Virus record (IMG/VR): IMGVR_UViG_3300025012_000026
Span: 124,001 to 188,000 of that record
Strand: one strand, 5' to 3'
Length of the DNA: 64,000 nt
Positions within the stretch are counted from its first letter, which is position 1. Each line of letters begins with the position of its first letter. The position numbers and the translations under genes are program-made. Positions 50,227-59,228 of this stretch are shown here, piece after piece. The notes beneath the pieces were generated by a model. It was given only the letters and a program-made list of their open reading frames with translations, had not been told where the DNA came from and ran no database searches.

Positions 50227-50258
50227 GTCTACAGTCCCATCACTTAGGGACTGTAGAC
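50227..50258. terminator. stem-loop overlapping the yopR-like stop codon
   Basis: GTCTACAGTCCC-atcactta-GGGACTGTAGAC. Confidence 0.65.
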
Positions 50259-51250
50259 TTAGTTTGTGTTTGCTTATAAGTCTCATACATTTCTTTTAAT
50301 CCTTGCCAACCCCTTTCATCCAATTCTAAGTCTTTAAATAATTGCTTAAAATCTTCAGATTTTAATTCACCAAGTTCTATTTCTTTTTGTAAACATCTGT
50401 CAAGCATACCGGATTGAAATATAAGAGTTGGATTTAAAAATTTAATACCTGTATAAGTTCTAAAGTTTTTAAATCTCGAACTTATATTTCCAACAGTAAT
50501 TTTTTCATCATTGTCACTACTTTTCCTGTCAAGTGTTCTAAGAATATATGGAGTATCTTTAACAGGCATAATAGCAAATCTTCCGGTATCTTCTCCATTT
50601 GATTTATGATAAGTGTCTTCAATGCAAGCCATTCGCAATATTTCCATAGTCCTTGGATCTACAGTTATAGGTCTTGGTCGAGGATTTTTAATTTTGTCAT
50701 CTGGATCTCTAGTTATAATAACTATATTTGATTCAGGGTCTAGATCACTCATTTTTAGATTTCTTAATTCTTCATAGGTGTGTCCTTTTATTGTTCTGCC
50801 TCTGATATTTTCATATAATGATGCCATTAATGCTTTATCGACATAATTATACAATCCGTCACAATAATCATACATTTGTTCTCTAGTGATATAGGAATTT
50901 CTCTGAGCTACTTGATGGATATATTTTGGTAAATCTTCTTTTTTATCAACTAATTTCAATACGTTCATTGAACTGTAATTGTTAAATAAACACCAATCAA
51001 GATATTGCATGATAATTGTATAAGATACACCTAATGATTTAAGAGATTTCTTTTTCATTCCAATTAGTAATTCTTTTACTTCCTCGTAACTAAATTTGCT
51101 CAAATCTTTGTTTTTTTCATGCTCGAATCTACTAACACTTTTTAAGATAGAGGTATTTGTCACTCTAGTGCTTTCATTAGGATATTTCTCATCAAGAAAA
51201 CGATTTTTCAATTCTTCGTTAAATAAAGTTCTTTCAATAGTTAATGACAT
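50240..51250 (-). CDS. mrpR: SPbeta YopR/MrpR (SroF)-like master repressor with a tyrosine-recombinase fold
   Basis: FNEELKNRFL, KDLSKFS..V.ELL, QYLDW, YITRE, L.NY..KA....L.E, Y...NG and FLNP..I..SG.L blocks match recalled YopR; HxxR catalytic motif absent; follows a yopQ homolog. Confidence 0.8.
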   Translation of the reverse strand: MSLTIERTLFNEELKNRFLDEKYPNESTRVTNTSILKSVSRFEHEKNKDLSKFSYEEVKELLIGMKKKSLKSLGVSYTIIMQYLDWCLFNNYSSMNVLKLVDKKEDLPKYIHQVAQRNSYITREQMYDYCDGLYNYVDKALMASLYENIRGRTIKGHTYEELRNLKMSDLDPESNIVIITRDPDDKIKNPRPRPITVDPRTMEILRMACIEDTYHKSNGEDTGRFAIMPVKDTPYILRTLDRKSSDNDEKITVGNISSRFKNFRTYTGIKFLNPTLIFQSGMLDRCLQKEIELGELKSEDFKQLFKDLELDERGWQGLKEMYETYKQTQTKSTVPK

Positions 51251-52605
51251 TATGATACCTCCTTCTGAAGTTGATAAACAACATCTTTAAAATAATCAGA
51301 AATCTTTTTAAATGTAGATAAATTTACATGATTTTCGATTCCAATTTTTTTCCAAATTTTATTTGATTTATCGAAATCTAAAGAGTTTAATACTTTTACT
51401 AATCTAGGTTTCCAGTCATCACCATATTCTTGTCTTAATAAATCTCCTAAAATAATATACCCCATAAACATGTTGTTATGTGCAAGATATGAATTTTCTT
51501 TGGTATTAGATAATTCTGTTTTAAACTTTGAATAATTGAGTCCAATAATATTATTGAACAACTCTACAATATCATTTTCAACTTGTGCGGTTCTAATAAC
51601 TGGCTCCTCTTTAAGATCATAAAGAAATTCAATGGATTTTGATAAAGTATCAAATGTCATTAATTTGTTTTCAATAATCAATTCCTTTTCATTTAAGGCT
51701 ATACGATTAAACATTTCGTTTGCCCTTTGTCTAGAATTAATAGCTTTTGCTACTTCCATATTTGGATTGGCTGTATTTTTAAAATCAACCCATTCAGTTT
51801 CAATTTGTGTACTTTTACTTTCTTGTCGAATTATTTCATTGGCACGCTCTTCTGTAACGTGGTGAATATAAATTGATGTAACCCTATCTATGTCATTCTT
51901 AATTTCAACAGTTTTTAACATGCCACAGGTTCTATTTGCACCATCAATTATGTCTACTAACGTAGACGCATTATCTGGTTCAATTAATAACGTTCTAGTT
52001 TTAAGATCATACTTAAACTTTTCTTGTCCATTTATTTTGCGAATGTTCCACATAATAGCATTAGTGCAAAAAGAACCATCTATCATTGACTCTGTAATTT
52101 CTGATACCTTTTTGCTGTCAATATTAATAGATTCAACAATTCTGTTTCCACTTCGTCTTTTTAAAAGTTGTCTTTGAGTATTTGGATTATATGTTAATAG
52201 TCCATTACCCATATAAAGATTAATATTTTGATAAGTTTCCTTTGTACATAACCATTGACTATCATCTATTTGATCGACATTATGAAGTAAAATATACTTA
52301 ACTTTTTCTTTATCAAGTTTTTTGTAATAATCAGCAGAAGACAATTCAATCTCTGTAAAGAACTCATCTGGATTTATTTCTGTTCGGTGAGTGTATCCAT
52401 AAAGATATTTTGTAAATAAACATAGTTCAATTTCTTCAACATAAACCAAAGGAATTGCTTTAGTGAATATACCTGTAGTTCTGCCCCTCGGTATACCTCT
52501 TTCTAATAATTTGCCTATGACTTGCTCTTGAATTTGATTGTCATTTGAATAATCTTCAATGACTAAATTAAGAATATCCTCAAGAATTTGACGATCTTGT
52601 TTCAT
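51250..52605 (-). CDS. yopQ: SPbeta YopQ (SroE)-like DndB/DGQHR-family protein
   Basis: INP..FFTE.E, LL.YNPN.QR, DIIDGANR (DGQHR variant) and LDFDK.NK.W..IG blocks; about 451 aa; RBS places the start at MKQDRQ. Confidence 0.8.
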   Translation of the reverse strand: MKQDRQILEDILNLVIEDYSNDNQIQEQVIGKLLERGIPRGRTTGIFTKAIPLVYVEEIELCLFTKYLYGYTHRTEINPDEFFTEIELSSADYYKKLDKEKVKYILLHNVDQIDDSQWLCTKETYQNINLYMGNGLLTYNPNTQRQLLKRRSGNRIVESINIDSKKVSEITESMIDGSFCTNAIMWNIRKINGQEKFKYDLKTRTLLIEPDNASTLVDIIDGANRTCGMLKTVEIKNDIDRVTSIYIHHVTEERANEIIRQESKSTQIETEWVDFKNTANPNMEVAKAINSRQRANEMFNRIALNEKELIIENKLMTFDTLSKSIEFLYDLKEEPVIRTAQVENDIVELFNNIIGLNYSKFKTELSNTKENSYLAHNNMFMGYIILGDLLRQEYGDDWKPRLVKVLNSLDFDKSNKIWKKIGIENHVNLSTFKKISDYFKDVVYQLQKEVS

Positions 52606-52678
52606 AATATTTATTCCTCCTTTTGACATATCAGCAACAAGTTATGTTGCTATGTATTGGTTAATAATACGCAATGCT

Positions 52679-52777
52679 ATTATAATATATAATATGCCAA
52701 TACGTCAAGAAGAATGCCTGATTAGTTTTATTATTTATGATTATATCATTATAACATTATTGATTGCATAATGTCAA
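52679..52777 (-). promoter_or_regulatory. two tandem sigma-A promoters upstream of yopQ-yopR
   Basis: TTGACA(52772-77)-18-TATAAT(52748-53) and TTGACG(52703-08)-18-TATAAT(52679-84). Confidence 0.6.
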
Positions 52778-52816: not shown

Positions 52817-53638
52817 TTAATTAATCATATTCTCATAATCTTGATTCCCAACATTTTCACAAACCATTTGTGCTGTTTTTTCTTTGCATAAATAATGATT
52901 AATTACCATTAGTAACCATGTTAAAAATATTACTGGAATAGATGTTATTATAACAATAGCAATTAGTTCATCAATAAATTGTAATTTAATTATAATGCTA
53001 TTGTTTTCTACTAATTTGTTCATATAATTTACCACTAGAACTCTAGTTGACAATACTAACAACAAACCACTAATAATAAATTTATTTCTGATAACCGAAC
53101 TAAATAGATTAATTTTTACTTTGCTGTTTTTTCTAACTAGAATTAAGGAAACAATACATAGATGCAAAATTTTGATTGGAATGGCCCATAAGATATTGTA
53201 CATGACATTATCATTAAAAAAACTATATGGCTTATCTAATAACGATAATAGAAGTGGACAGTATGCGTATTCTATTATTCCTACAATGACGAAGCTTCCG
53301 ACTGTATAGATTGCTGTTTTAAATATTAATGATATGTTTATGTCAAAACTGTTTGTGATGACTATGTATTCCATTAAGATTATCATTAGAAACATAATTG
53401 ATAATATAGAATTTTGTTTTGGTACTATGATAATATACTTGAAGATATTTGCCATTATTGCTACTGGTAATGCTGTGAGCATAATCCATGTTAGACTACG
53501 TTTCCACATTAAAATATCTAGTAGATCATTAATTTTTAAAAGTGATAATGCGATGATTACAATGAACATTTGTTCAGGGAGGCCAACAAATATGGTGTTT
53601 AGGATGGCATTTGTTATGGATTGCATATGGGTGTTCAC
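52817..53638 (-). CDS. polytopic membrane protein B, AgrC-sensor-like without kinase domain
   Basis: about 7 TM segments; MQ.ITNAILN....LPE..F motif shared with 55463-56272; directly downstream of agrB; no H-box or GHKL domain. Confidence 0.7.
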   Translation of the reverse strand: MNTHMQSITNAILNTIFVGLPEQMFIVIIALSLLKINDLLDILMWKRSLTWIMLTALPVAIMANIFKYIIIVPKQNSILSIMFLMIILMEYIVITNSFDINISLIFKTAIYTVGSFVIVGIIEYAYCPLLLSLLDKPYSFFNDNVMYNILWAIPIKILHLCIVSLILVRKNSKVKINLFSSVIRNKFIISGLLLVLSTRVLVVNYMNKLVENNSIIIKLQFIDELIAIVIITSIPVIFLTWLLMVINHYLCKEKTAQMVCENVGNQDYENMIN

Positions 53639-53644
53639 TCCTTT

Positions 53645-54277
53645 TTATTTTATTTTTGAATCTAGCGCAGAATAAACAATTTGCCCTATTCTGCTTATAC
53701 TAAATAATTCTAATAATAATCCAAAACAACTTGAAATTACAATAATCTTTAGATTGAAAAGTAGGGAGATGGTCATTATGATTGTCCATATAAATAGATA
53801 ATATGATGACCATCTTTTGAATTTTTTGATTTCTAATGGCTCTGTGATTGGTTTATTTGGTGTATCTCTAGGTACATAACGATAAATTATATACATTGTC
53901 ATTACAACACAGAAATTGAATAAATACCACATGTCTATAAATGACCAATATTGGAGTGTATATTTGATTAATAATGCTGATCCAATGAACTGAATGGTTG
54001 AAAAAGTTATACATTTATTATATTCCCCGAAATGGTATCCACCTGCTATGATACGTAAACTACTGAAGGTCAAGGCGATTATTAGGGTAGGAAGCTTTAT
54101 GCTAAAAATAGATGCTAAAGATACCATTAACATAGCCTTAAAAATAGCACCCCAAACTACCATGAAACCATATGTGAAAACCTCAATCTGATCTTCTACG
54201 GTAGGATATTTATCATTAGGTACTTTTTTTGCTAACCACTTAGCAGAATGATTTGATACAAATTCTATAAAACTCAT
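53645..54277 (-). CDS. agrB: AgrB autoinducing-peptide processing membrane cysteine protease
   Basis: E...YG; LRIIAGGYH......C (conserved Arg/His/Cys); P.DTPNKPI; about 210 aa, multi-TM. Confidence 0.92.
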   Translation of the reverse strand: MSFIEFVSNHSAKWLAKKVPNDKYPTVEDQIEVFTYGFMVVWGAIFKAMLMVSLASIFSIKLPTLIIALTFSSLRIIAGGYHFGEYNKCITFSTIQFIGSALLIKYTLQYWSFIDMWYLFNFCVVMTMYIIYRYVPRDTPNKPITEPLEIKKFKRWSSYYLFIWTIIMTISLLFNLKIIVISSCFGLLLELFSISRIGQIVYSALDSKIK

Positions 54278-54304
54278 TAAATTATTTAATCTTCCTTTCT
54301 TTTA

Positions 54305-55129
54305 TCATGCATAAGCCACCTGTTGCCCTACACTAGTATAATTATTTTCTTGTATATTCTGTCTGATTGGTTTAACTTTATTTAGATTTTTCAAAGTCTC
54401 TATTGCTTCCTCTTCGTTTACATGTAATTCTAAAATACCCTCAGATTTCATAAGGGCAATTTCAACTTTCAACATTATATTTGAAGGACATTCAGCGACT
54501 TTTTGAAATACTCCATTCTTTCCTATTAATCTTCTTTTTGATATTGTGTTTGGTAATTCACAACATATAATAGAGTCCTGTGGGATATTACATTCTTTAC
54601 TGCTTGCGAAAACGTGAGTCGGCATCTTAGCTTTGGATCTAGTTGTCATCGCTATGACAATAGAGTTGCTAGAGCAAGCATTCCCCTTATTATTTTGCAC
54701 CACAAGCACCATTCTTGGGCCGCCTACTTCACTATCTATCCCTTTGTCACCAAAGTCTGCGAAACAAAAATCTCCTCTTCTGACACGAATATTTTTTATT
54801 TGCTCTAAATCATTATTTGCATATAAAGAGTATCCACATGCTATTTTTAGATCCTGCAACGAAACCCTACCTTCTGAATTATTTGCGAAAACATTGAGGG
54901 TTTGAACGTTCGGATAAACATTTATTTTTTCACGAACGATAAGTTCTATGTACCCTCCTTCAATTTTGCAGTCTGCTCCAAAATTATTGATTGTCCTATG
55001 GGTTCCTTTAGCAAGCATAATTAAACTAGCTAGTTTCTTAAAATCCTTTTTGGCATTTACCTCAGTGTTGGTGGTATTAGTTGATTTGGCAAATAATTTG
55101 TTGAACATAATAATGCACATCCTTTTCAT
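54305..55129 (-). CDS. XRE-type HTH - MazF/PemK endoribonuclease fusion
   Basis: N-term L..AKG..RTIN.F...C.I...YI......P....L..FA....G.VS...L..ACGY (XRE HTH); C-term RRGD..FAD.G....SE.GG.R..LVVQN..GN..S....IAMTT...K.PTH...DS.I.CE...TISK.RL (MazF); probable start MFNKLF at 55108. Confidence 0.85.
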   Translation of the reverse strand: MKRMCIIMFNKLFAKSTNTTNTEVNAKKDFKKLASLIMLAKGTHRTINNFGADCKIEGGYIELIVREKINVYPNVQTLNVFANNSEGRVSLQDLKIACGYSLYANNDLEQIKNIRVRRGDFCFADFGDKGIDSEVGGPRMVLVVQNNKGNACSSNSIVIAMTTRSKAKMPTHVFASSKECNIPQDSIICCELPNTISKRRLIGKNGVFQKVAECPSNIMLKVEIALMKSEGILELHVNEEEAIETLKNLNKVKPIRQNIQENNYTSVGQQVAYA

Positions 55130-55132
55130 ATT

Positions 55133-55201
55133 TAATAAGATATAAAATAATTTTCTTTAACTGATAGTATAATTATATCTTATTATGTATGGATATGTCA
55201 A
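55133..55201 (-). promoter_or_regulatory. promoter of the HTH-mazF/agrB/sensor-B operon with overlapping inverted repeat (candidate operator)
   Basis: TTGACA(55196-201)-18-TATAAT; 13-bp perfect IR TAATAAGATATAA (55133-45) / TTATATCTTATTA (55173-85). Confidence 0.7.
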
Positions 55202-55240
55202 CATAATTATTTTCAATTGTCTATTAATTTATATTATGGT

Positions 55241-55270
55241 TATAGGAGAGAACCGAAGTCCTCTCCTATA
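55241..55270 (-). terminator. UUCG-tetraloop stem-loop after agrD
   Basis: minus strand TATAGGAGAGGAC-TTCG-GTTCTCTCCTATA; no poly-U tail. Confidence 0.65.
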
Positions 55271-55287
55271 TGTAAAAGTGATTAAAA

Positions 55288-55407
55288 TTATTTATTTAGA
55301 CATTTAGGATCTTTTGGTTGATAAGAAAACGCCCAAGAAGCCATATTTGATGTAAATAGTGCTAACATAGATACTAATCCAGCAAGAACAATATATACTT
55401 TCTTCAT
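55288..55407 (-). CDS. agrD: AgrD cyclic (thio)lactone autoinducer propeptide, 39 aa, missing from the ORF track
   Basis: MKKVYIVLAGLVSMLALFTSNMA-SWAFS-YQPKDPKCLNK; RBS AAAGGAGGTG; amphipathic leader and clostridial (H/Y)QPxxPxxL tail. Confidence 0.9.
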   Translation of the reverse strand: MKKVYIVLAGLVSMLALFTSNMASWAFSYQPKDPKCLNK

Positions 55408-55462
55408 GTTAATGTCACCTCCTTTCCAAGAATTTATTTATATAACAAATGCCTTAATCATC

Positions 55463-56272
55463 TTAATCAATAAGATTTTCTTGCGTTTGCTGTATACGTT
55501 TTTCTATACCGACTACACAATTTATCATATACCACAACACCATAAGAAATATAGTTGGTAGACTTAGAATGAATCCTATTGATAATATTTGTTCCCAAAT
55601 TGGCAATGTGCTTAAGATATTATTATATCCTATCAATTTCACAACATAAATTGTAAATAGTGTTAAGAAAGATATTATAAAAATTATCATATTGGTTAAT
55701 GGTTTATTTTTGAACACTAAATTGTACAATTTGATATTTACTTGTTCATTCATCTTAACTATAAAAAATATTATTATTGAGAATTCTAAAATTCTAGAAG
55801 GAATTACTAGTAAAAACATATAAGAAATATTTTGATTAAAATATTCATAAGGAATTTTTAACAATGAAAACGTTAGTGGCATATAAGCTAATTCAATTAA
55901 ACTGACTATTATTAGAGTAATCATTGAGTAAACTATGGTTTTAAATATTAGTTTATTTTCTTGAGTTATTTCAGTAATTCTTATTATGTAAATAATCGCC
56001 AACCAAAATATTATTAATGAGATTATTGATGTTAATAATTTAGGCAAAATTATAATATACTTAAAAATACTTATACACATTGCCATCAGCAATGAAGGTA
56101 TTATAATCCACTTAATATTTATTCTCCACATTCTTATGTCAAGTAAATCAAATCTTTTGAACAATATTAATGTCATACATGTTACAAATATTTCTTCAGG
56201 TAAGGATATAAGAACCATGTTCAATAAAGCATTTGTTACACCTTGCATATGTATTACCTCTTTCTTATTCAT
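55463..56272 (-). CDS. polytopic membrane protein A, AgrC-sensor-like without kinase domain
   Basis: about 7 TM segments; paralog of 52817-53638; directly upstream of agrD; probable start MQGVTN at 56248. Confidence 0.7.
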   Translation of the reverse strand: MNKKEVIHMQGVTNALLNMVLISLPEEIFVTCMTLILFKRFDLLDIRMWRINIKWIIIPSLLMAMCISIFKYIIILPKLLTSIISLIIFWLAIIYIIRITEITQENKLIFKTIVYSMITLIIVSLIELAYMPLTFSLLKIPYEYFNQNISYMFLLVIPSRILEFSIIIFFIVKMNEQVNIKLYNLVFKNKPLTNMIIFIISFLTLFTIYVVKLIGYNNILSTLPIWEQILSIGFILSLPTIFLMVLWYMINCVVGIEKRIQQTQENLID

Positions 56273-56329: not shown

Positions 56330-56941
56330 TTATTGATTCATATATACCTTATTAATTTCTTTGACTGAACAGTAAACTATTATAAAAGCAAATATTCTTA
56401 TTAAAATATCACCAATACTCCAAATTGACATACCAAATATATCAAATATATCGGACAAAAATATTAGATTTGTCATATGATCACCTAAAACATGAAAATC
56501 ATTAAACTTAGAAGCATTCATAATCATATCATACTGAGTGTAACCAGTTGAATAAGATACATCTGGGAAAATAGGCATCATCCCATGATTAAAGTACATT
56601 ACAATATAATTCAATACAAATCCACACAAGAGACTACAACAAGCGATAATATACTCTTTATACTTCTCATGCCTAAATAGAACATCAAGTCCTAGAATCA
56701 TATATGATCCTAATATAGCATTCTTTATTATGTGTTGATATTGAAGAAAGTAGTAATTTTGATTCATTATTGTATATTGTAGATAGATGTAAAATATAGA
56801 CATTAATATAACTGGATAGATACTCCATCTTTTTAGTATTGGTTTTATATTGTATGATTCTTTATGTATTTGGAATTTTCCTAGTTTTATGTAAAGATAT
56901 ATTTTAGAGAATATGAGCGATGCTATTAGTGTCTCGACCAT
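56330..56941 (-). CDS. DUF5317-family membrane protein
   Basis: LNYIVM..NHGMMPI...H......T.L.FLSDI.......SIGDI pattern; multi-TM. Confidence 0.7.
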   Translation of the reverse strand: MVETLIASLIFSKIYLYIKLGKFQIHKESYNIKPILKRWSIYPVILMSIFYIYLQYTIMNQNYYFLQYQHIIKNAILGSYMILGLDVLFRHEKYKEYIIACCSLLCGFVLNYIVMYFNHGMMPIFPDVSYSTGYTQYDMIMNASKFNDFHVLGDHMTNLIFLSDIFDIFGMSIWSIGDILIRIFAFIIVYCSVKEINKVYMNQ

Positions 56942-57001: not shown

Positions 57002-58738
57002 CTACGGAGGTTTATTATTTTGATCTTTAATCATATTCTCATAATCTACTAAATACATCCATTTAAGTAATTCACCAGTCTCAAGATCTTTACCACATGT
57101 TTTTTGTTTATTTTTGCAACATCTTCCAATTCCGACACGATTTATATTATATTCTTTTGATGCGTTTGCAATAGAATTGAATACTTTGTTTGTTGTCAAA
57201 CATATTATCTTCATATCTCTTGAACTATGTAGTATATACTTTATTTCTTGTTTATCTTTAAAAATATATTCTTCGTAATACATCCAAACCATCTTTTCCC
57301 CTGTTTCGGGATGTTTTCCTGCCGATTTTTGTATACCTAAACAACATGATGAAATATCACTATTCCTTATATTATACTTACTTGTTGCATCAGTTATAGA
57401 ATTAAAAATTTCATTAGTTGTTAAACAAACAACTTTTGTTTGCATTACTTCTTTAGTATCATAATCACACCACCCCAATTCTACACCTTGTTTTAAATAT
57501 CTAGAAACTGTAGAGGTATGAACCTTTATTATATCTGCTATTTCTACAGTCCTTTTAATTCCACTATTCCATAAATTACATGAAATTTTAACTAAACTTG
57601 AACATCCAGCCTCATGACACTTCAACCAATCTATATCTTTTTCTTTAAAATTAAGTAATATGGGCAATCTAGACCTCATTATGCTATTCTTTATCCACTC
57701 TAACTCAGACTTTCTACAATCGATTATTATGTAATTATTAATATTGTTTGTTCTCGCTAACCACTCTTTATCAAAATCATTTTCCTGAACTTCTGCTAAT
57801 GAAACTTTCCAATTACCTGTTATTTCTTCATAATGCTGAATTCCTTGAATTTCAATGACAATTTTATCTAATTTTTCTATGTAAAAATCATATCTGTATC
57901 CACCACACCATTTAAAAGTTATTTTACTCAATTGAGATTTAAAATTTAGATGTAATTGTTCTAAAAAAGATAGAAAGAACTTCTCTGGATAACTCACACC
58001 ATCGGAACATCTAGGGCAAGCAAATCCATGTACTACTAAGGTGCTAAAATTTAAATTTTTATCATATCCACAATCTGGACATTTCATAGGTATTTTTGGA
58101 TTTGATCCAAAAGAATGTTTATTTGCATCTTCTTTATTTACCAAATACTTAATTAAATGTGGATGAGTTGTCACAACCATATTACACATATTGCAATCAA
58201 GACTTCCATTTTGTCCATTTGTAAAACTACTAATACTTTTTAATTCACTTTCATGTTCTGGATGTTCTAAACACTTAAACCAATAACCTTTTTTATTAAA
58301 ACCTGCGGAACTAAAGCTTACATCATTAGGGCTTAATACTTTCCCATTTTTTATATTTTTTGCATCATCCCATCTAGATAATATCCAATCTGCCAATTCT
58401 TTAGGGAGATTATCGTAACACCATTGATAAAAAGATTTACTATTTTTTAATTTTGTAATTCTTCCATTTTCACTCACAAACAGTTTTATGGCACATTTTA
58501 TACAATAATATTTTTCACCCTCATGTCTTAAATCTATATAATGTCGCCATATGACATTTTTTATAATTTCTCCGCAACCATCACACTGAATATCGACTAA
58601 TGCGTGTGAACTATGAGGTAAATCCTCTACTTTCACTTCGAATTCATTGCCCATTTTTGTAAAGATATAATCTCTTTGTTCATAATATTTTTTAATACTT
58701 GCATTCCATTTCATTTTTACGGTTTTAGTTATTAACAA
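57002..58738 (-). CDS. homing-endonuclease-like protein (Zn-ribbons + DUF559/Vsr-like nuclease + NUMOD1 repeats)
   Basis: several CxxC ribbons; S.PE...YDFYI...IEIQGIQHY; C-terminal KVVCLTT..F.SI..A repeats and KSAGKHP.TGE..W shared with 34290-35495. Confidence 0.8.
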   Translation of the reverse strand: MLITKTVKMKWNASIKKYYEQRDYIFTKMGNEFEVKVEDLPHSSHALVDIQCDGCGEIIKNVIWRHYIDLRHEGEKYYCIKCAIKLFVSENGRITKLKNSKSFYQWCYDNLPKELADWILSRWDDAKNIKNGKVLSPNDVSFSSAGFNKKGYWFKCLEHPEHESELKSISSFTNGQNGSLDCNMCNMVVTTHPHLIKYLVNKEDANKHSFGSNPKIPMKCPDCGYDKNLNFSTLVVHGFACPRCSDGVSYPEKFFLSFLEQLHLNFKSQLSKITFKWCGGYRYDFYIEKLDKIVIEIQGIQHYEEITGNWKVSLAEVQENDFDKEWLARTNNINNYIIIDCRKSELEWIKNSIMRSRLPILLNFKEKDIDWLKCHEAGCSSLVKISCNLWNSGIKRTVEIADIIKVHTSTVSRYLKQGVELGWCDYDTKEVMQTKVVCLTTNEIFNSITDATSKYNIRNSDISSCCLGIQKSAGKHPETGEKMVWMYYEEYIFKDKQEIKYILHSSRDMKIICLTTNKVFNSIANASKEYNINRVGIGRCCKNKQKTCGKDLETGELLKWMYLVDYENMIKDQNNKPP

Positions 58739-58805: not shown

Positions 58806-59228
58806 TTATGCATACACAATATTCTTATCTTTCTGACCTATTGAGAATTGAATAAGTATACCTTGATTTATACGTTCCATAGTTTCAGAATTACAATATC
58901 CAACTTTCTTCAAAAATATATCTTCATTTTTGTTAACTAACATAACTTGTTCACAGAGAGCAATAGAATCTCTTAATAGTCCTGAAGAGTTTTTATTTAT
59001 GCTTTTGTGAGTTGGTAATTTTGACTTCGTGCCGATAGAACTAATTGGACATATATGCACAACTGGACTGTAGCGATTTGCCATATTATTACTTACAATT
59101 ATGCATGGACGCAATTTTCCTTGGATAGATCCCTTGCCTTCTCCTAGATCAACTAACCATATCTCTCCTCGATTAAATTGTTGTGGTTGTTGAACATTAT
59201 TTATTACATTTTGCATAATAATTATCAC
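58806..59228 (-). CDS. mazF: MazF/PemK (NdoA-like) endoribonuclease with no adjacent antitoxin
   Basis: RGEIWLVDLG...GS.QG..RPCIIVSN...NRYSP....PISS...KLPTH...GL.RDS.AL.EQ. Confidence 0.9.
   Translation of the reverse strand: MIIIMQNVINNVQQPQQFNRGEIWLVDLGEGKGSIQGKLRPCIIVSNNMANRYSPVVHICPISSIGTKSKLPTHKSINKNSSGLLRDSIALCEQVMLVNKNEDIFLKKVGYCNSETMERINQGILIQFSIGQKDKNIVYA

What the first reader, a model, noticed from the sequence alone, without database searches (positions are those of the whole stretch)
52817..56272. Two paralogous kinase-less AgrC-like membrane proteins and no AgrA regulator
Seen: 55463-56272 (upstream of agrD) and 52817-53638 (downstream of agrB) are clear paralogs (MQ.[VI]TNA[LI]LN...LPE..F, DLLDI.MW, FKYIII.PK, LIFKT..Y, P...FN.N..Y). 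Each has about 7 TM helices and only a short C-terminal tail. There is no histidine-kinase domain and no LytTR/AgrA gene in the window. Inference: these are AIP receptors that signal without phosphorelay, for example by sequestering or releasing HTH-MazF at the membrane, by forming an A/B heterodimer, or by acting as decoys of host AgrC. One could read the phage peptide and the other the host peptide.
Basis: partly seen in the sequence, partly recalled or inferred. Interest (0 to 1): 0.78.

Follow-up and report, generated by a model that had tools for sequence, protein, structure and literature searches.

The report
Kinase-less agr membrane proteins in phage
A 227-kb phage carries a peptide-signalling (agr) gene set in which the usual sensor kinase is replaced by two copies of a previously undescribed seven-helix membrane protein that has no kinase part. 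The same protein family sits directly in front of the signal-peptide gene in many cellulose-degrading clostridia.

Summary
55463-56272 (A, 269 aa) and 52817-53638 (B, 273 aa) are paralogs (39% identity, E=1e-50). A confident AlphaFold model of A shows seven TM helices, N-terminus out and C-terminus in. Neither has a kinase domain. The whole 227-kb phage genome has no HATPase, LytTR or receiver domain.

They are not decayed kinases. About 270 homologs are all 227-347 aa, and no Pfam or NCBIfam model covers them. In clostridia related to Ruminiclostridium and Anaerobacterium, each gene examined but one is followed within 100 nt by an agrD gene. At least 15 genomes have the operon agrB-7TM-agrD.

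In one bacterium the same domain (hhalign 99.3%, E=4e-20) is the N-terminal part of HisKA_3/HATPase_c kinases beside agrD, so it can act as a sensor input.

Phage relatives keep a core module: DUF5317, 7TM, agrD, N-domain-MazF, AgrB. A near-identical phage has the same AgrB and B (100%) but different A (41%), agrD (53%) and MazF fusion (57%). A therefore co-varies with the peptide and B does not.

Best reading (about 0.5): peptide receptors without phosphorelay, possibly gating the MazF fusion. Homology to AgrC itself is unproven, and a role in peptide export or maturation remains open.

The parts
56330..56941 (-). DUF5317 membrane protein (203 aa). It lies directly upstream of the 7TM gene in most phage-type modules and within the module in all of them.
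   Evidence: Pfam PF17248 at 1.9e-18. Directly upstream of the 7TM gene in L004, L049, L050, L051 and L052; in L007-L009 the DUF4379 gene lies between. Not linked to agr loci in three bacterial genomes.
55463..56272 (-). 7TM paralog A (269 aa), kinase-less, the member paired with agrD.
   Evidence: It is 41% identical to its counterpart in a phage whose AgrB and B are 100% identical.
55288..55407 (-). agrD precursor (39 aa, ...NMASWAFSYQPKDPKCLNK). The predicted product is a tail-less five-residue Ser-lactone ring, SWAFS.
   Evidence: TIGR04223 at 30.8 bits against a cut-off of 19. The ring is predicted by analogy with the C. thermocellum S25-F29 lactone, which was verified by mass spectrometry (PMC5322536).
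55241..55270 (-). 13-bp hairpin with a UUCG loop just after agrD. It is terminator- or stabiliser-like but has no U tract.
   Evidence: Free energy -19.7 kcal/mol, z-score -5.6, and 0 of 200 shuffles fold as well.
55172..55201 (-). Perfect sigma-70 consensus promoter (TTGACA-18-TATAAT) ahead of the MazF fusion, AgrB and B.
   Evidence: 12 of 12 consensus positions match. This is a consensus match only.
54305..55129 (-). Conserved ~100-aa N-domain fused to a PemK/MazF endoribonuclease domain (274 aa).
   Evidence: PemK_toxin at 1.7e-17, residues 117-228. The N-domain is conserved in 7 loci (alignment A6) but has no Pfam or PDB sequence match. It is present in every phage-type module examined.
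54255..54350 (.). Mosaic joint. Below it the window is 100% identical in DNA to contig L007; above it identity is mostly 50-60%.
   Evidence: Sliding-window identity and protein identities.
53645..54277 (-). AgrB (210 aa), the AgrD-processing membrane peptidase.
   Evidence: Pfam PF04647 at 1.4e-34. It is the only copy in the phage.
52817..53638 (-). 7TM paralog B (273 aa; probably 269 aa from the ATG at 53626), kinase-less. No agrD follows it.
   Evidence: It is 100% identical in the L007 phage and absent from related phages L052 and L053.
58806..59228 (-). Stand-alone MazF/PemK protein (140 aa) at the upstream edge of the variable arm.
   Evidence: PemK_toxin at 6.4e-24. Found at the same position in L004, L007, L049 and L052.

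Best explanation
A and B belong to an undescribed family of seven-helix membrane proteins (N-terminus outside, C-terminus inside, no kinase). This family is the third component of a non-canonical agr system: AgrB matures the AgrD precursor, and the 7TM protein most likely binds the resulting cyclic peptide at the membrane as its receptor.

The following steps are shown:
- The family is natively kinase-less.
- It is tied gene-to-gene to agrD and often to agrB.
- Its domain can serve as the input of a true histidine kinase.
- In the phage, A co-varies with agrD while B and AgrB do not.

The following steps are inferred:
- A binds the phage peptide, predicted to be an SWAFS lactone.
- Because no kinase or regulator exists in the phage, the output goes through protein contacts on the cytoplasmic side. 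The conserved S-I/L-P-E-E and F-D-x-L motifs lie at the inner end of TM1 and in loop 1.
- The most likely target is the N-domain-MazF RNase, which is encoded in the same module and co-varies with A.
- B is an 'orphan' copy that reads something other than the phage's own variable peptide, or acts together with AgrB.
For: All homologs are 227-347 aa and none carries a kinase. No Pfam or NCBIfam model covers the family.

In 12 of 12 bacterial loci first examined an AgrD-type ORF ([SC]xxxx[YH]QP[KR]xP) starts 20-80 nt after the 7TM gene. The same holds in L046 and L048 and for two of the three tandem copies in L047. These peptides pass TIGR04223.

AgrB lies immediately upstream in at least 15 genomes, and the family occurs in 49 of 149 genomes of that order. 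One unlinked AgrB coexists with several 7TM-agrD cassettes in a genome.

Canonical agrBD loci in the same genomes carry AgrC/AgrA and no 7TM gene, so the two are complementary.

In G311 the locus reads: kinase-less 7TM, agrD, two 7TM::HisKA_3::HATPase_c proteins, then a REC-GerE regulator. hhalign of the family against the 463-aa kinase gives 99.3%, E=3.9e-20, over 245 columns.

Topology is like AgrC: 7 TM, N-out, C-in. ESM-model fold matches to AgrC/VirS-type kinases reach TM 0.64-0.76.

Phage allele swap: AgrB and B are 100% identical, while A is 41%, agrD 53% and the MazF fusion 57% identical. The module DUF5317, 7TM, agrD, N-domain-MazF, AgrB is conserved in six independent loci besides the window, down to about 29% identity.
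Against: No peptide binding or signalling has been shown for any member.

Profile comparison finds no similarity between the TM domain and AgrC-type kinases. Only the bacterial C-tail aligns to the segment after the phospho-His (80%, E about 1e-5), and that same kinase segment also hits designer PPR repeats.

The confident AlphaFold model matches nothing in the ESM Atlas, PDB or BFVD.

In G311 a kinase-less copy still precedes agrD although kinase-fused copies are present, which hints at a role other than sensing. One genome (G211) has the 7TM-agrD pair but no detectable AgrB.

The divergent arm above 54,300 extends beyond the agr genes for more than 6 kb. The co-variation may therefore partly reflect a simple mosaic joint.

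Outer and inner halves of the protein are equally conserved.
Confidence: 0.5

Rival explanations
1. The 7TM protein is a peptide-production factor rather than a receptor. It would partner with AgrB to export or flip the cyclised AgrD intermediate, or help release it. This would be functionally analogous to the extra membrane proteins needed in S. aureus (MroQ, AbcA/PmtCD).
For: The gene sits directly before agrD, and often between agrB and agrD, which is the position of a biosynthetic gene. In G311 a kinase-less copy is kept next to agrD even though kinase-fused copies follow. G211 has 7TM-agrD but no detected AgrB. S. aureus needs non-agr membrane proteins for AIP export and leader removal (bioRxiv 10.64898/2026.09.29.755489; PMC9388083 listed). 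The near-invariant Glu26 is replaced by Gln in the kinase-fused form, so it may serve a function specific to the kinase-less forms.
Against: The family has no conserved His, Cys or Ser set and no CPBP or AgrB motifs, and no Pfam model hits it. The leader cut site (Ala|Ser or Ala|Cys) looks like a signal-peptidase site, as noted for C. thermocellum. Canonical agrBD loci in the same genomes have no such gene. Orphan copies without agrD exist, namely B and the middle gene of L047. The domain is used as a kinase input.
Confidence: 0.25
2. The proteins are decoys or immunity factors. They would bind the cyclic peptide to protect the producer, or the infected cell, from its growth-inhibiting effect. 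Alternatively they would soak up or block host signalling without any output of their own.
For: The related C. thermocellum lactone peptide inhibits growth at 50 uM (PMC5322536). The phage proteins lack even the roughly 55-aa cytoplasmic tail of the bacterial members. Each peptide gene has its own 7TM gene, as bacteriocin-immunity pairs do.
Against: The most conserved motifs lie on the cytoplasmic side, which a pure extracellular sink would not need. Tight linkage to a cytoplasmic MazF fusion in phage modules suggests an intracellular output. There are no PADLOC hits.
Confidence: 0.12
3. The proteins are truncated pseudogenes of full AgrC kinases picked up by the phage and have no function.
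For: They have AgrC-like topology and lie in an agr cluster. The bacterial tail weakly resembles the segment after the phospho-His.
Against: The reading frames are intact. There are 191 representative clusters (50% identity) at E<=1e-3, and all of the 150 listed are 326 aa or shorter. The motifs are conserved family-wide. Synteny is conserved across deeply diverged phages. No kinase remnant lies downstream.
Confidence: 0.02

Closest known systems
AgrC (HPK10 histidine-kinase receptor of the staphylococcal/clostridial agr system) and VirS of C. perfringens
   Same: Both are polytopic membrane proteins with N-terminus out and C-terminus in, about 7 TM helices, encoded beside agrD and agrB. Loci carry either AgrC/AgrA or this protein. 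ESM-model fold matches reach TM 0.64-0.76.
   Different: The phage proteins have no DHp His, no HATPase_c_5 domain and no LytTR partner. Profile comparison detects no homology of the TM domain. The confident AlphaFold model could not be compared with an AgrC sensor, because none is solved.
Phage phiCDHM1 agr genes (Hargreaves et al. 2014, PMC3901668)
   Same: Both are clostridial phages carrying agrB and agrD plus a membrane receptor-type gene.
   Different: The agrC of phiCDHM1 was described by its authors as a histidine-kinase homologue. Here the receptor-type genes have no kinase, there are two of them, and they are embedded in a module with DUF5317 and MazF-family genes.
Orphan agrBD loci of clostridia (C. 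difficile agr1; C. thermocellum Clo1313_2818; R. cellulolyticum agrBD1-4)
   Same: All are agr peptide loci without an adjacent AgrC/AgrA. The peptides share the tail-less five-residue ring followed by [YH]QPxxP (PMC5322536, PMC8251862, PMC8534292).
   Different: The passages of those papers that I read name no receptor or third gene. The 7TM family described here is an explicit candidate for it in the Ruminiclostridium/Anaerobacterium group. Whether those particular loci contain it was not tested.
MroQ (CPBP-type membrane protease) and the AbcA/PmtCD exporters of S. aureus AIP biosynthesis
   Same: They are membrane proteins needed for AIP maturation or export in addition to AgrB, which is a possible functional analogy.
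   Different: The 7TM family has no EExxxR, FxxxH or HxxxN motifs, no conserved His and no ABC domains. The S. aureus genes are not encoded in the agr locus.
7TM::HisKA_3::HATPase_c kinases of genome G311 (unnamed)
   Same: Their N-terminal 252 residues are homologous to the whole A/B family (99.3%, E=3.9e-20), and they lie in an agrD locus.
   Different: They carry a NarL-type kinase module and a REC-GerE partner, and the S-I-P-E-E motif is replaced by L-F-P-Q-A. They were found in only one genome among the 149 surveyed.

Membership tests
AgrC / HPK10 sensor kinase | Polytopic N-terminal sensor (6-7 TM, N-out, C-in) | tested here: met
   AlphaFold model of A with 7 helices, pLDDT 95. The Lys/Arg distribution fits N-out, C-in.
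AgrC / HPK10 sensor kinase | DHp helix with a phospho-acceptor His | tested here: not met
   The proteins end 15-25 residues after TM7, and the family has no conserved His.
AgrC / HPK10 sensor kinase | HATPase_c_5 (GHKL) catalytic domain | tested here: not met
   No Pfam hit, and none anywhere in the phage genome.
AgrC / HPK10 sensor kinase | Cognate LytTR response regulator (AgrA) | tested here: not met
   No LytTR or Response_reg domain in the 227-kb genome.
AgrC / HPK10 sensor kinase | Homology or shared fold of the TM sensor domain | tested here: inconclusive
   hhalign finds nothing in the TM region. ESM-model matches reach TM 0.64-0.76. The confident AlphaFold model has no match. No AgrC sensor structure is solved.
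AgrC / HPK10 sensor kinase | Binds the cognate AIP | not testable with these tools
   This needs binding or reporter assays.
agr-associated kinless 7TM family (undescribed; alignments A1, A2, A5) | 250-330 aa, 7 TM, S-[IL]-P-E-[EQ] motif in TM1 and P-x-R in TM5 | tested here: met
   A has SLPEE and B has GLPEQ. E26 is present in 130 of 133 sequences, P25 in 123 and R160 in 114.
agr-associated kinless 7TM family (undescribed; alignments A1, A2, A5) | Gene followed within about 100 nt by an agrD gene | tested here: met
   Met for A and for 12 of 12 bacterial loci. Not met for B or for the middle copy in L047.
AgrD (TIGR04223) | Score above the curated cut-off | tested here: met
   The ORF at 55288-55407 scores 30.8 bits against a cut-off of 19.
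AgrB (PF04647) | A or B themselves match the AgrB profile | tested here: not met
   A and B give no hit. Only the neighbouring gene at 53645-54277 is AgrB.
CPBP / MroQ-type intramembrane protease | EExxxR, FxxxH and HxxxN/D motifs | tested here: not met
   An EE pair is present, but there is no Arg at +4, no conserved His and no Pfam hit.
   The PemK domain is clear. The N-domain has no Pfam or PDB sequence hit and no similarity to the neighbouring XRE regulators in bacterial loci; the only signal is a weak PHROG hit at E=0.013.

The most novel reading that the evidence does not exclude
A phage-borne quorum-sensing circuit that works without phosphorelay. A kinase-less seven-helix receptor (A) reads the phage's own cyclic peptide and directly holds or releases an N-domain-MazF RNase at the membrane. 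Translation shut-off in infected cells would then depend on how many neighbours are infected. Receptor, peptide and RNase would be exchanged together as 'pherotype' alleles between otherwise identical phages. The second receptor (B) would eavesdrop on a different peptide, possibly the host's. The same receptor family would be the missing sensor of orphan agrBD loci in cellulolytic clostridia.
Probability: 0.2. Interest if true: 0.9.

Novelty: new variant of a known kind. Interest (0 to 1): 0.72.

Why it matters
Many clostridial agr loci make a cyclic peptide but have no known receptor. This family is a concrete, testable candidate for the missing component in one large group of cellulose degraders: it occurs in 49 of 149 sampled genomes of that order. 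It shows that an agr system can be built without AgrC/AgrA.

In phages it defines a conserved five-gene module that couples a peptide signal to a MazF-type RNase. That would be a new form of virus-encoded cell-to-cell communication, alongside arbitrium and the phiCDHM1 agr genes. Naturally occurring allele swaps provide ready-made specificity controls for experiments.

Tried and rejected
- **Family libraries.** Pfam, NCBIfam, PHROGs and PADLOC gave no hit for A, B or 38 bacterial members.
- **PDB sequence search.** A profile search against PDB sequences found nothing.
- **First AlphaFold model (23 sequences, pLDDT 77).** Foldseek against PDB and AFDB-SwissProt found nothing. AFDB clusters returned only an uncharacterised family member and a partial MreD match.
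- **Profile comparison with nine AgrC-type kinases.** Only the bacterial C-tail aligned, and I treat that as suggestive at most because the same kinase segment hits designer PPR proteins.
- **Faster divergence on the extracellular side.** No difference was found, family-wide or between alleles.
- **MazF N-domain versus neighbouring bacterial XRE regulators.** No relation was found.
- **DUF5317 linkage to agr in bacteria.** Not linked in three genomes.
- **First genome-contig scan.** The phage-only patterns found nothing.
- **Literature.** I found no description of this family or of DUF5317.
- **RNA evidence.** No RNA run holds the region.
- **Pseudogene reading.** Rejected on the length distribution and conservation.


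Full report
**1. What is there**

The window is part of a 227,247-bp phage record rated 100% complete by CheckV (window = bases 124001-188000). It has 28% G+C and nearly all genes lie on the minus strand. The region reads, in transcription order:
- stand-alone MazF (58806-59228)
- DUF4379/NUMOD protein (57002-58738)
- DUF5317 membrane protein (56330-56941)
- 7TM protein A (55463-56272)
- a 39-aa ORF (55288-55407)
- a strong hairpin
- a perfect sigma-70 consensus promoter
- a 274-aa protein with a C-terminal PemK/MazF domain (54305-55129)
- AgrB (53645-54277)
- 7TM protein B (52817-53638)
- a second perfect promoter
- a DndB-like gene and an MrpR-like recombinase gene

The 39-aa ORF is a bona fide AgrD: it scores 30.8 bits on TIGR04223 against a cut-off of 19.

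**2. Check of the observation**

A and B are 39% identical over 261 residues, E=1e-50. A first AlphaFold model from 23 sequences was mediocre (pLDDT 77). A model from 133 homologs is confident (pLDDT 95.1, pTM 0.90). It shows seven long helices, and the last one extends about 18 residues beyond the membrane. Lys/Arg-rich loops 1 and 5 place the N-terminus outside and the C-terminus inside. B was not modelled separately.

Neither protein matches any Pfam, NCBIfam, PHROG or PADLOC model. The whole phage has no HATPase_c_5, HATPase_c, LytTR or receiver domain. It holds two copies of this family and one AgrB.

**3. The proteins are not broken kinases**

Word-indexed searches with A, with B and with the 133-sequence profile found only proteins of 202-347 aa. 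An exhaustive profile search of 1.84 billion representatives found 191 clusters at E<=1e-3. All 150 listed hits are 326 aa or shorter, and the full-length ones are 250-326 aa. The few that carry names are 'hypothetical protein' from Ruminiclostridium species and Clostridia or Acetivibrionales MAGs. None of 38 bacterial members hits a Pfam or NCBIfam model. I found no paper describing the family. It is an undescribed family that natively lacks a kinase.

**4. Bacterial context**

Twelve bacterial loci were examined first. In all twelve, an ORF of 38-58 aa starts 20-80 nt after the 7TM gene and ends in [SC]xxxx[YH]QP[KR]xP, which is the clostridial AgrD signature. Those tested pass TIGR04223.

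In the order that contains Anaerobacterium chartisolvens, 49 of 149 genomes carry the family, with one to five copies each. AgrB is present in 47 of those 49. In at least 15 genomes AgrB lies immediately upstream, giving the operon agrB-7TM-agrD. In others, one unlinked AgrB coexists with several 7TM-agrD cassettes. Tandem arrays of cassettes also occur, and one array contains a copy without its own agrD (L047).

The same genomes also have canonical loci (agrB-agrD with convergent AgrC and AgrA), and those lack the 7TM gene. Across Clostridia as a whole the family is rare, at 6 of 301 sampled genomes. XRE-type regulators flank the cassette in four independent loci. This is a lead only, because such genes are common.

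**5. Link to kinases**

In genome G311 the locus reads: kinase-less 7TM (286 aa), agrD, a 463-aa protein, a 412-aa protein, a REC-GerE response regulator, and a C39 ABC transporter. The first 252 residues of the 463-aa protein align with the whole family at 99.3% probability, E=3.9e-20, over 245 columns. Its C-terminal half is HisKA_3 plus HATPase_c.

So the domain is used in nature as the membrane input of a true histidine kinase next to agrD. This is the best evidence here that it is a sensing domain. In a tree, the two fused forms nest inside the tail-bearing bacterial group of kinase-less forms, so the fusion looks secondary (the grouping is weakly supported). In the fused form the near-invariant S-I-P-E-E motif is L-F-P-Q-A.

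**6. Relation to AgrC proper**

Topology and context resemble AgrC. However, profile comparison with nine AgrC-type kinases from the same genomes finds nothing in the TM region. Only the roughly 55-residue cytoplasmic tail of the bacterial members aligns, to the kinase segment just after the phospho-His (80%, E about 1e-5). That same kinase segment also hits designer PPR repeats, so I treat the match as suggestive at most. The phage proteins lack this tail.

ESM-Atlas models of A and of the 637-member phage cluster match AgrC/VirS-type kinases (HATPase_c_5) at TM 0.64-0.76 over 224-252 residues. The confident AlphaFold model matches nothing in the Atlas, PDB or BFVD. No AgrC sensor domain is solved. 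'Works like an AgrC sensor' is therefore plausible, but membership in the AgrC family fails on every kinase feature and is undecided for the sensor domain.

**7. The phage module**

Related phage contigs from groundwater and other metagenomes keep the genes DUF5317, 7TM, agrD, [N-domain + PemK/MazF] and AgrB together, even at about 29% identity of the 7TM protein (L004, L007, L049, L050, L051, L052/L053). In L050 no AgrB or agrD gene was called.

The roughly 100-aa N-domain of the MazF fusion is conserved in all seven loci (alignment A6). It has no Pfam or PDB sequence match, so the 'HTH' label is unconfirmed. Paralog B is present only in a subset of phages (window, L007, L004) and is absent in L052 and L053. 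In the tree, all phage A-type and B-type proteins fall in one well-supported clade of short, tail-less forms, and the B clade nests among A-type clades. This indicates a duplication within the phage lineage.

**8. A natural allele swap**

Contig L007 is 100% identical to the window in DNA from about 54,300 down to at least 49,400. That stretch covers AgrB, B, the DndB-like gene and the MrpR-like gene. Above the joint, DNA identity falls mostly to 50-60%. The protein identities there are:
- MazF fusion 57%
- agrD 53% (ring SWAFS versus SWLYS)
- A 41%
- DUF5317 39%

The joint lies at the MazF-fusion stop / AgrB start.

It follows that one AgrB serves two different peptides. A changes with the peptide, and B does not. 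This argues that A is the peptide-specific partner and that A and B have different jobs. One caveat applies: the divergent arm continues upstream for more than 6 kb, so part of the co-variation may be simple mosaicism.

**9. Mechanism**

My best reading (about 0.5) is that the family is the peptide-binding membrane component of a kinase-less agr variant. In the phage, A would read the phage peptide and pass the signal by protein contact on the cytoplasmic face, where the S-L-P-E-E and F-D-L-L-D motifs lie. The likely target is the MazF fusion. B would be an orphan reader or an AgrB partner.

The main rival (about 0.25) is a role in peptide export or maturation with AgrB. Three observations favour it: the gene's position before agrD, the retention of a kinase-less copy in G311, and a genome with 7TM-agrD but no detected AgrB. 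S. aureus shows that such extra membrane factors exist. Against it stand the lack of any catalytic motif, the signal-peptidase-like leader site, the existence of orphan copies, and the use of the domain as a kinase input.

A decoy or immunity role (about 0.12) is suggested by the growth-inhibiting C. thermocellum peptide. The pseudogene reading is rejected.

**10. Verdict**

The proteins are genuine, natively kinase-less agr components of a new family. Their receptor role is likely but not shown. Homology to AgrC is unproven, and the output path is inferred. The novelty class is a new variant of a known kind of system (agr quorum sensing), with a conserved phage module that has not been described in the literature I could search.

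Noticed in passing
window 54255-54350 (compared with L007:4291-10287): A razor-sharp mosaic joint. DNA is 100% identical to a metagenome contig below about 54,300 for at least 4.9 kb, and mostly 50-60% identical above it. The joint lies exactly between the MazF-fusion gene and agrB.
   Followed up: yes
window 55172-55201 and 52748-52777 (minus strand): Two perfect 12/12 sigma-70 consensus promoters, one ahead of the MazF fusion/AgrB/B unit and one ahead of the DndB-like gene. They suggest that A-agrD and MazF-fusion-AgrB-B are separate transcription units.
   Followed up: partly
window 55241-55270 (minus strand): A 13-bp hairpin with a UUCG loop directly after agrD (-19.7 kcal/mol, z -5.6) without a U tract. 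It could be a processing or stability element for the peptide mRNA.
   Followed up: partly
window 57002-58738 and 58806-59228: A 578-aa DUF4379/NUMOD-like protein (only 26-46% identical among relatives) and a stand-alone MazF precede the module. The phage thus has two MazF-family genes and no recognisable antitoxin nearby.
   Followed up: no
window 50240-52629: A DndB-like protein (459 aa) followed by an MrpR-like tyrosine recombinase (336 aa, start overlapping the DndB stop). The pair is conserved next to the agr module in related phages.
   Followed up: no
L046 (G311:C25:9000-17000): A bacterial locus with a kinase-less 7TM, agrD, two 7TM::HisKA_3::HATPase_c kinases, a REC-GerE regulator and a C39-peptidase ABC transporter. 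This is an agr variant wired to a NarL-type two-component system.
   Followed up: partly
L047 (G416:C2:60500-67500): A tandem array of three 7TM genes. The first and third are each followed by a different agrD, and the middle one has none.
   Followed up: partly
L048 (G211:C66): A genome with a 7TM-agrD pair, syntenic with G311, but no detectable AgrB anywhere. Either the assembly is incomplete or the peptide is matured without AgrB.
   Followed up: no
L010, L017, L020/L021, L023: XRE-family HTH_3 regulator genes lie next to the 7TM-agrD cassette, convergent or divergent, in four independent bacterial loci.
   Followed up: partly
(runs X5-X11): Several groundwater and soil metagenome runs hold only 0.3-0.7 of the region's words. 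This is consistent with other allele combinations of the module circulating in those sites. No RNA run holds it.
   Followed up: no
AFDB entry A3DH99: A 305-aa unnamed protein gave a weak partial fold match (TM 0.30 over 111 residues). From memory, this accession range belongs to C. thermocellum, whose AgrD peptide was reported without any agr partner genes (PMC5322536). It may be the family member next to that gene. The organism field was blank in the output, so this is unchecked.
   Followed up: no
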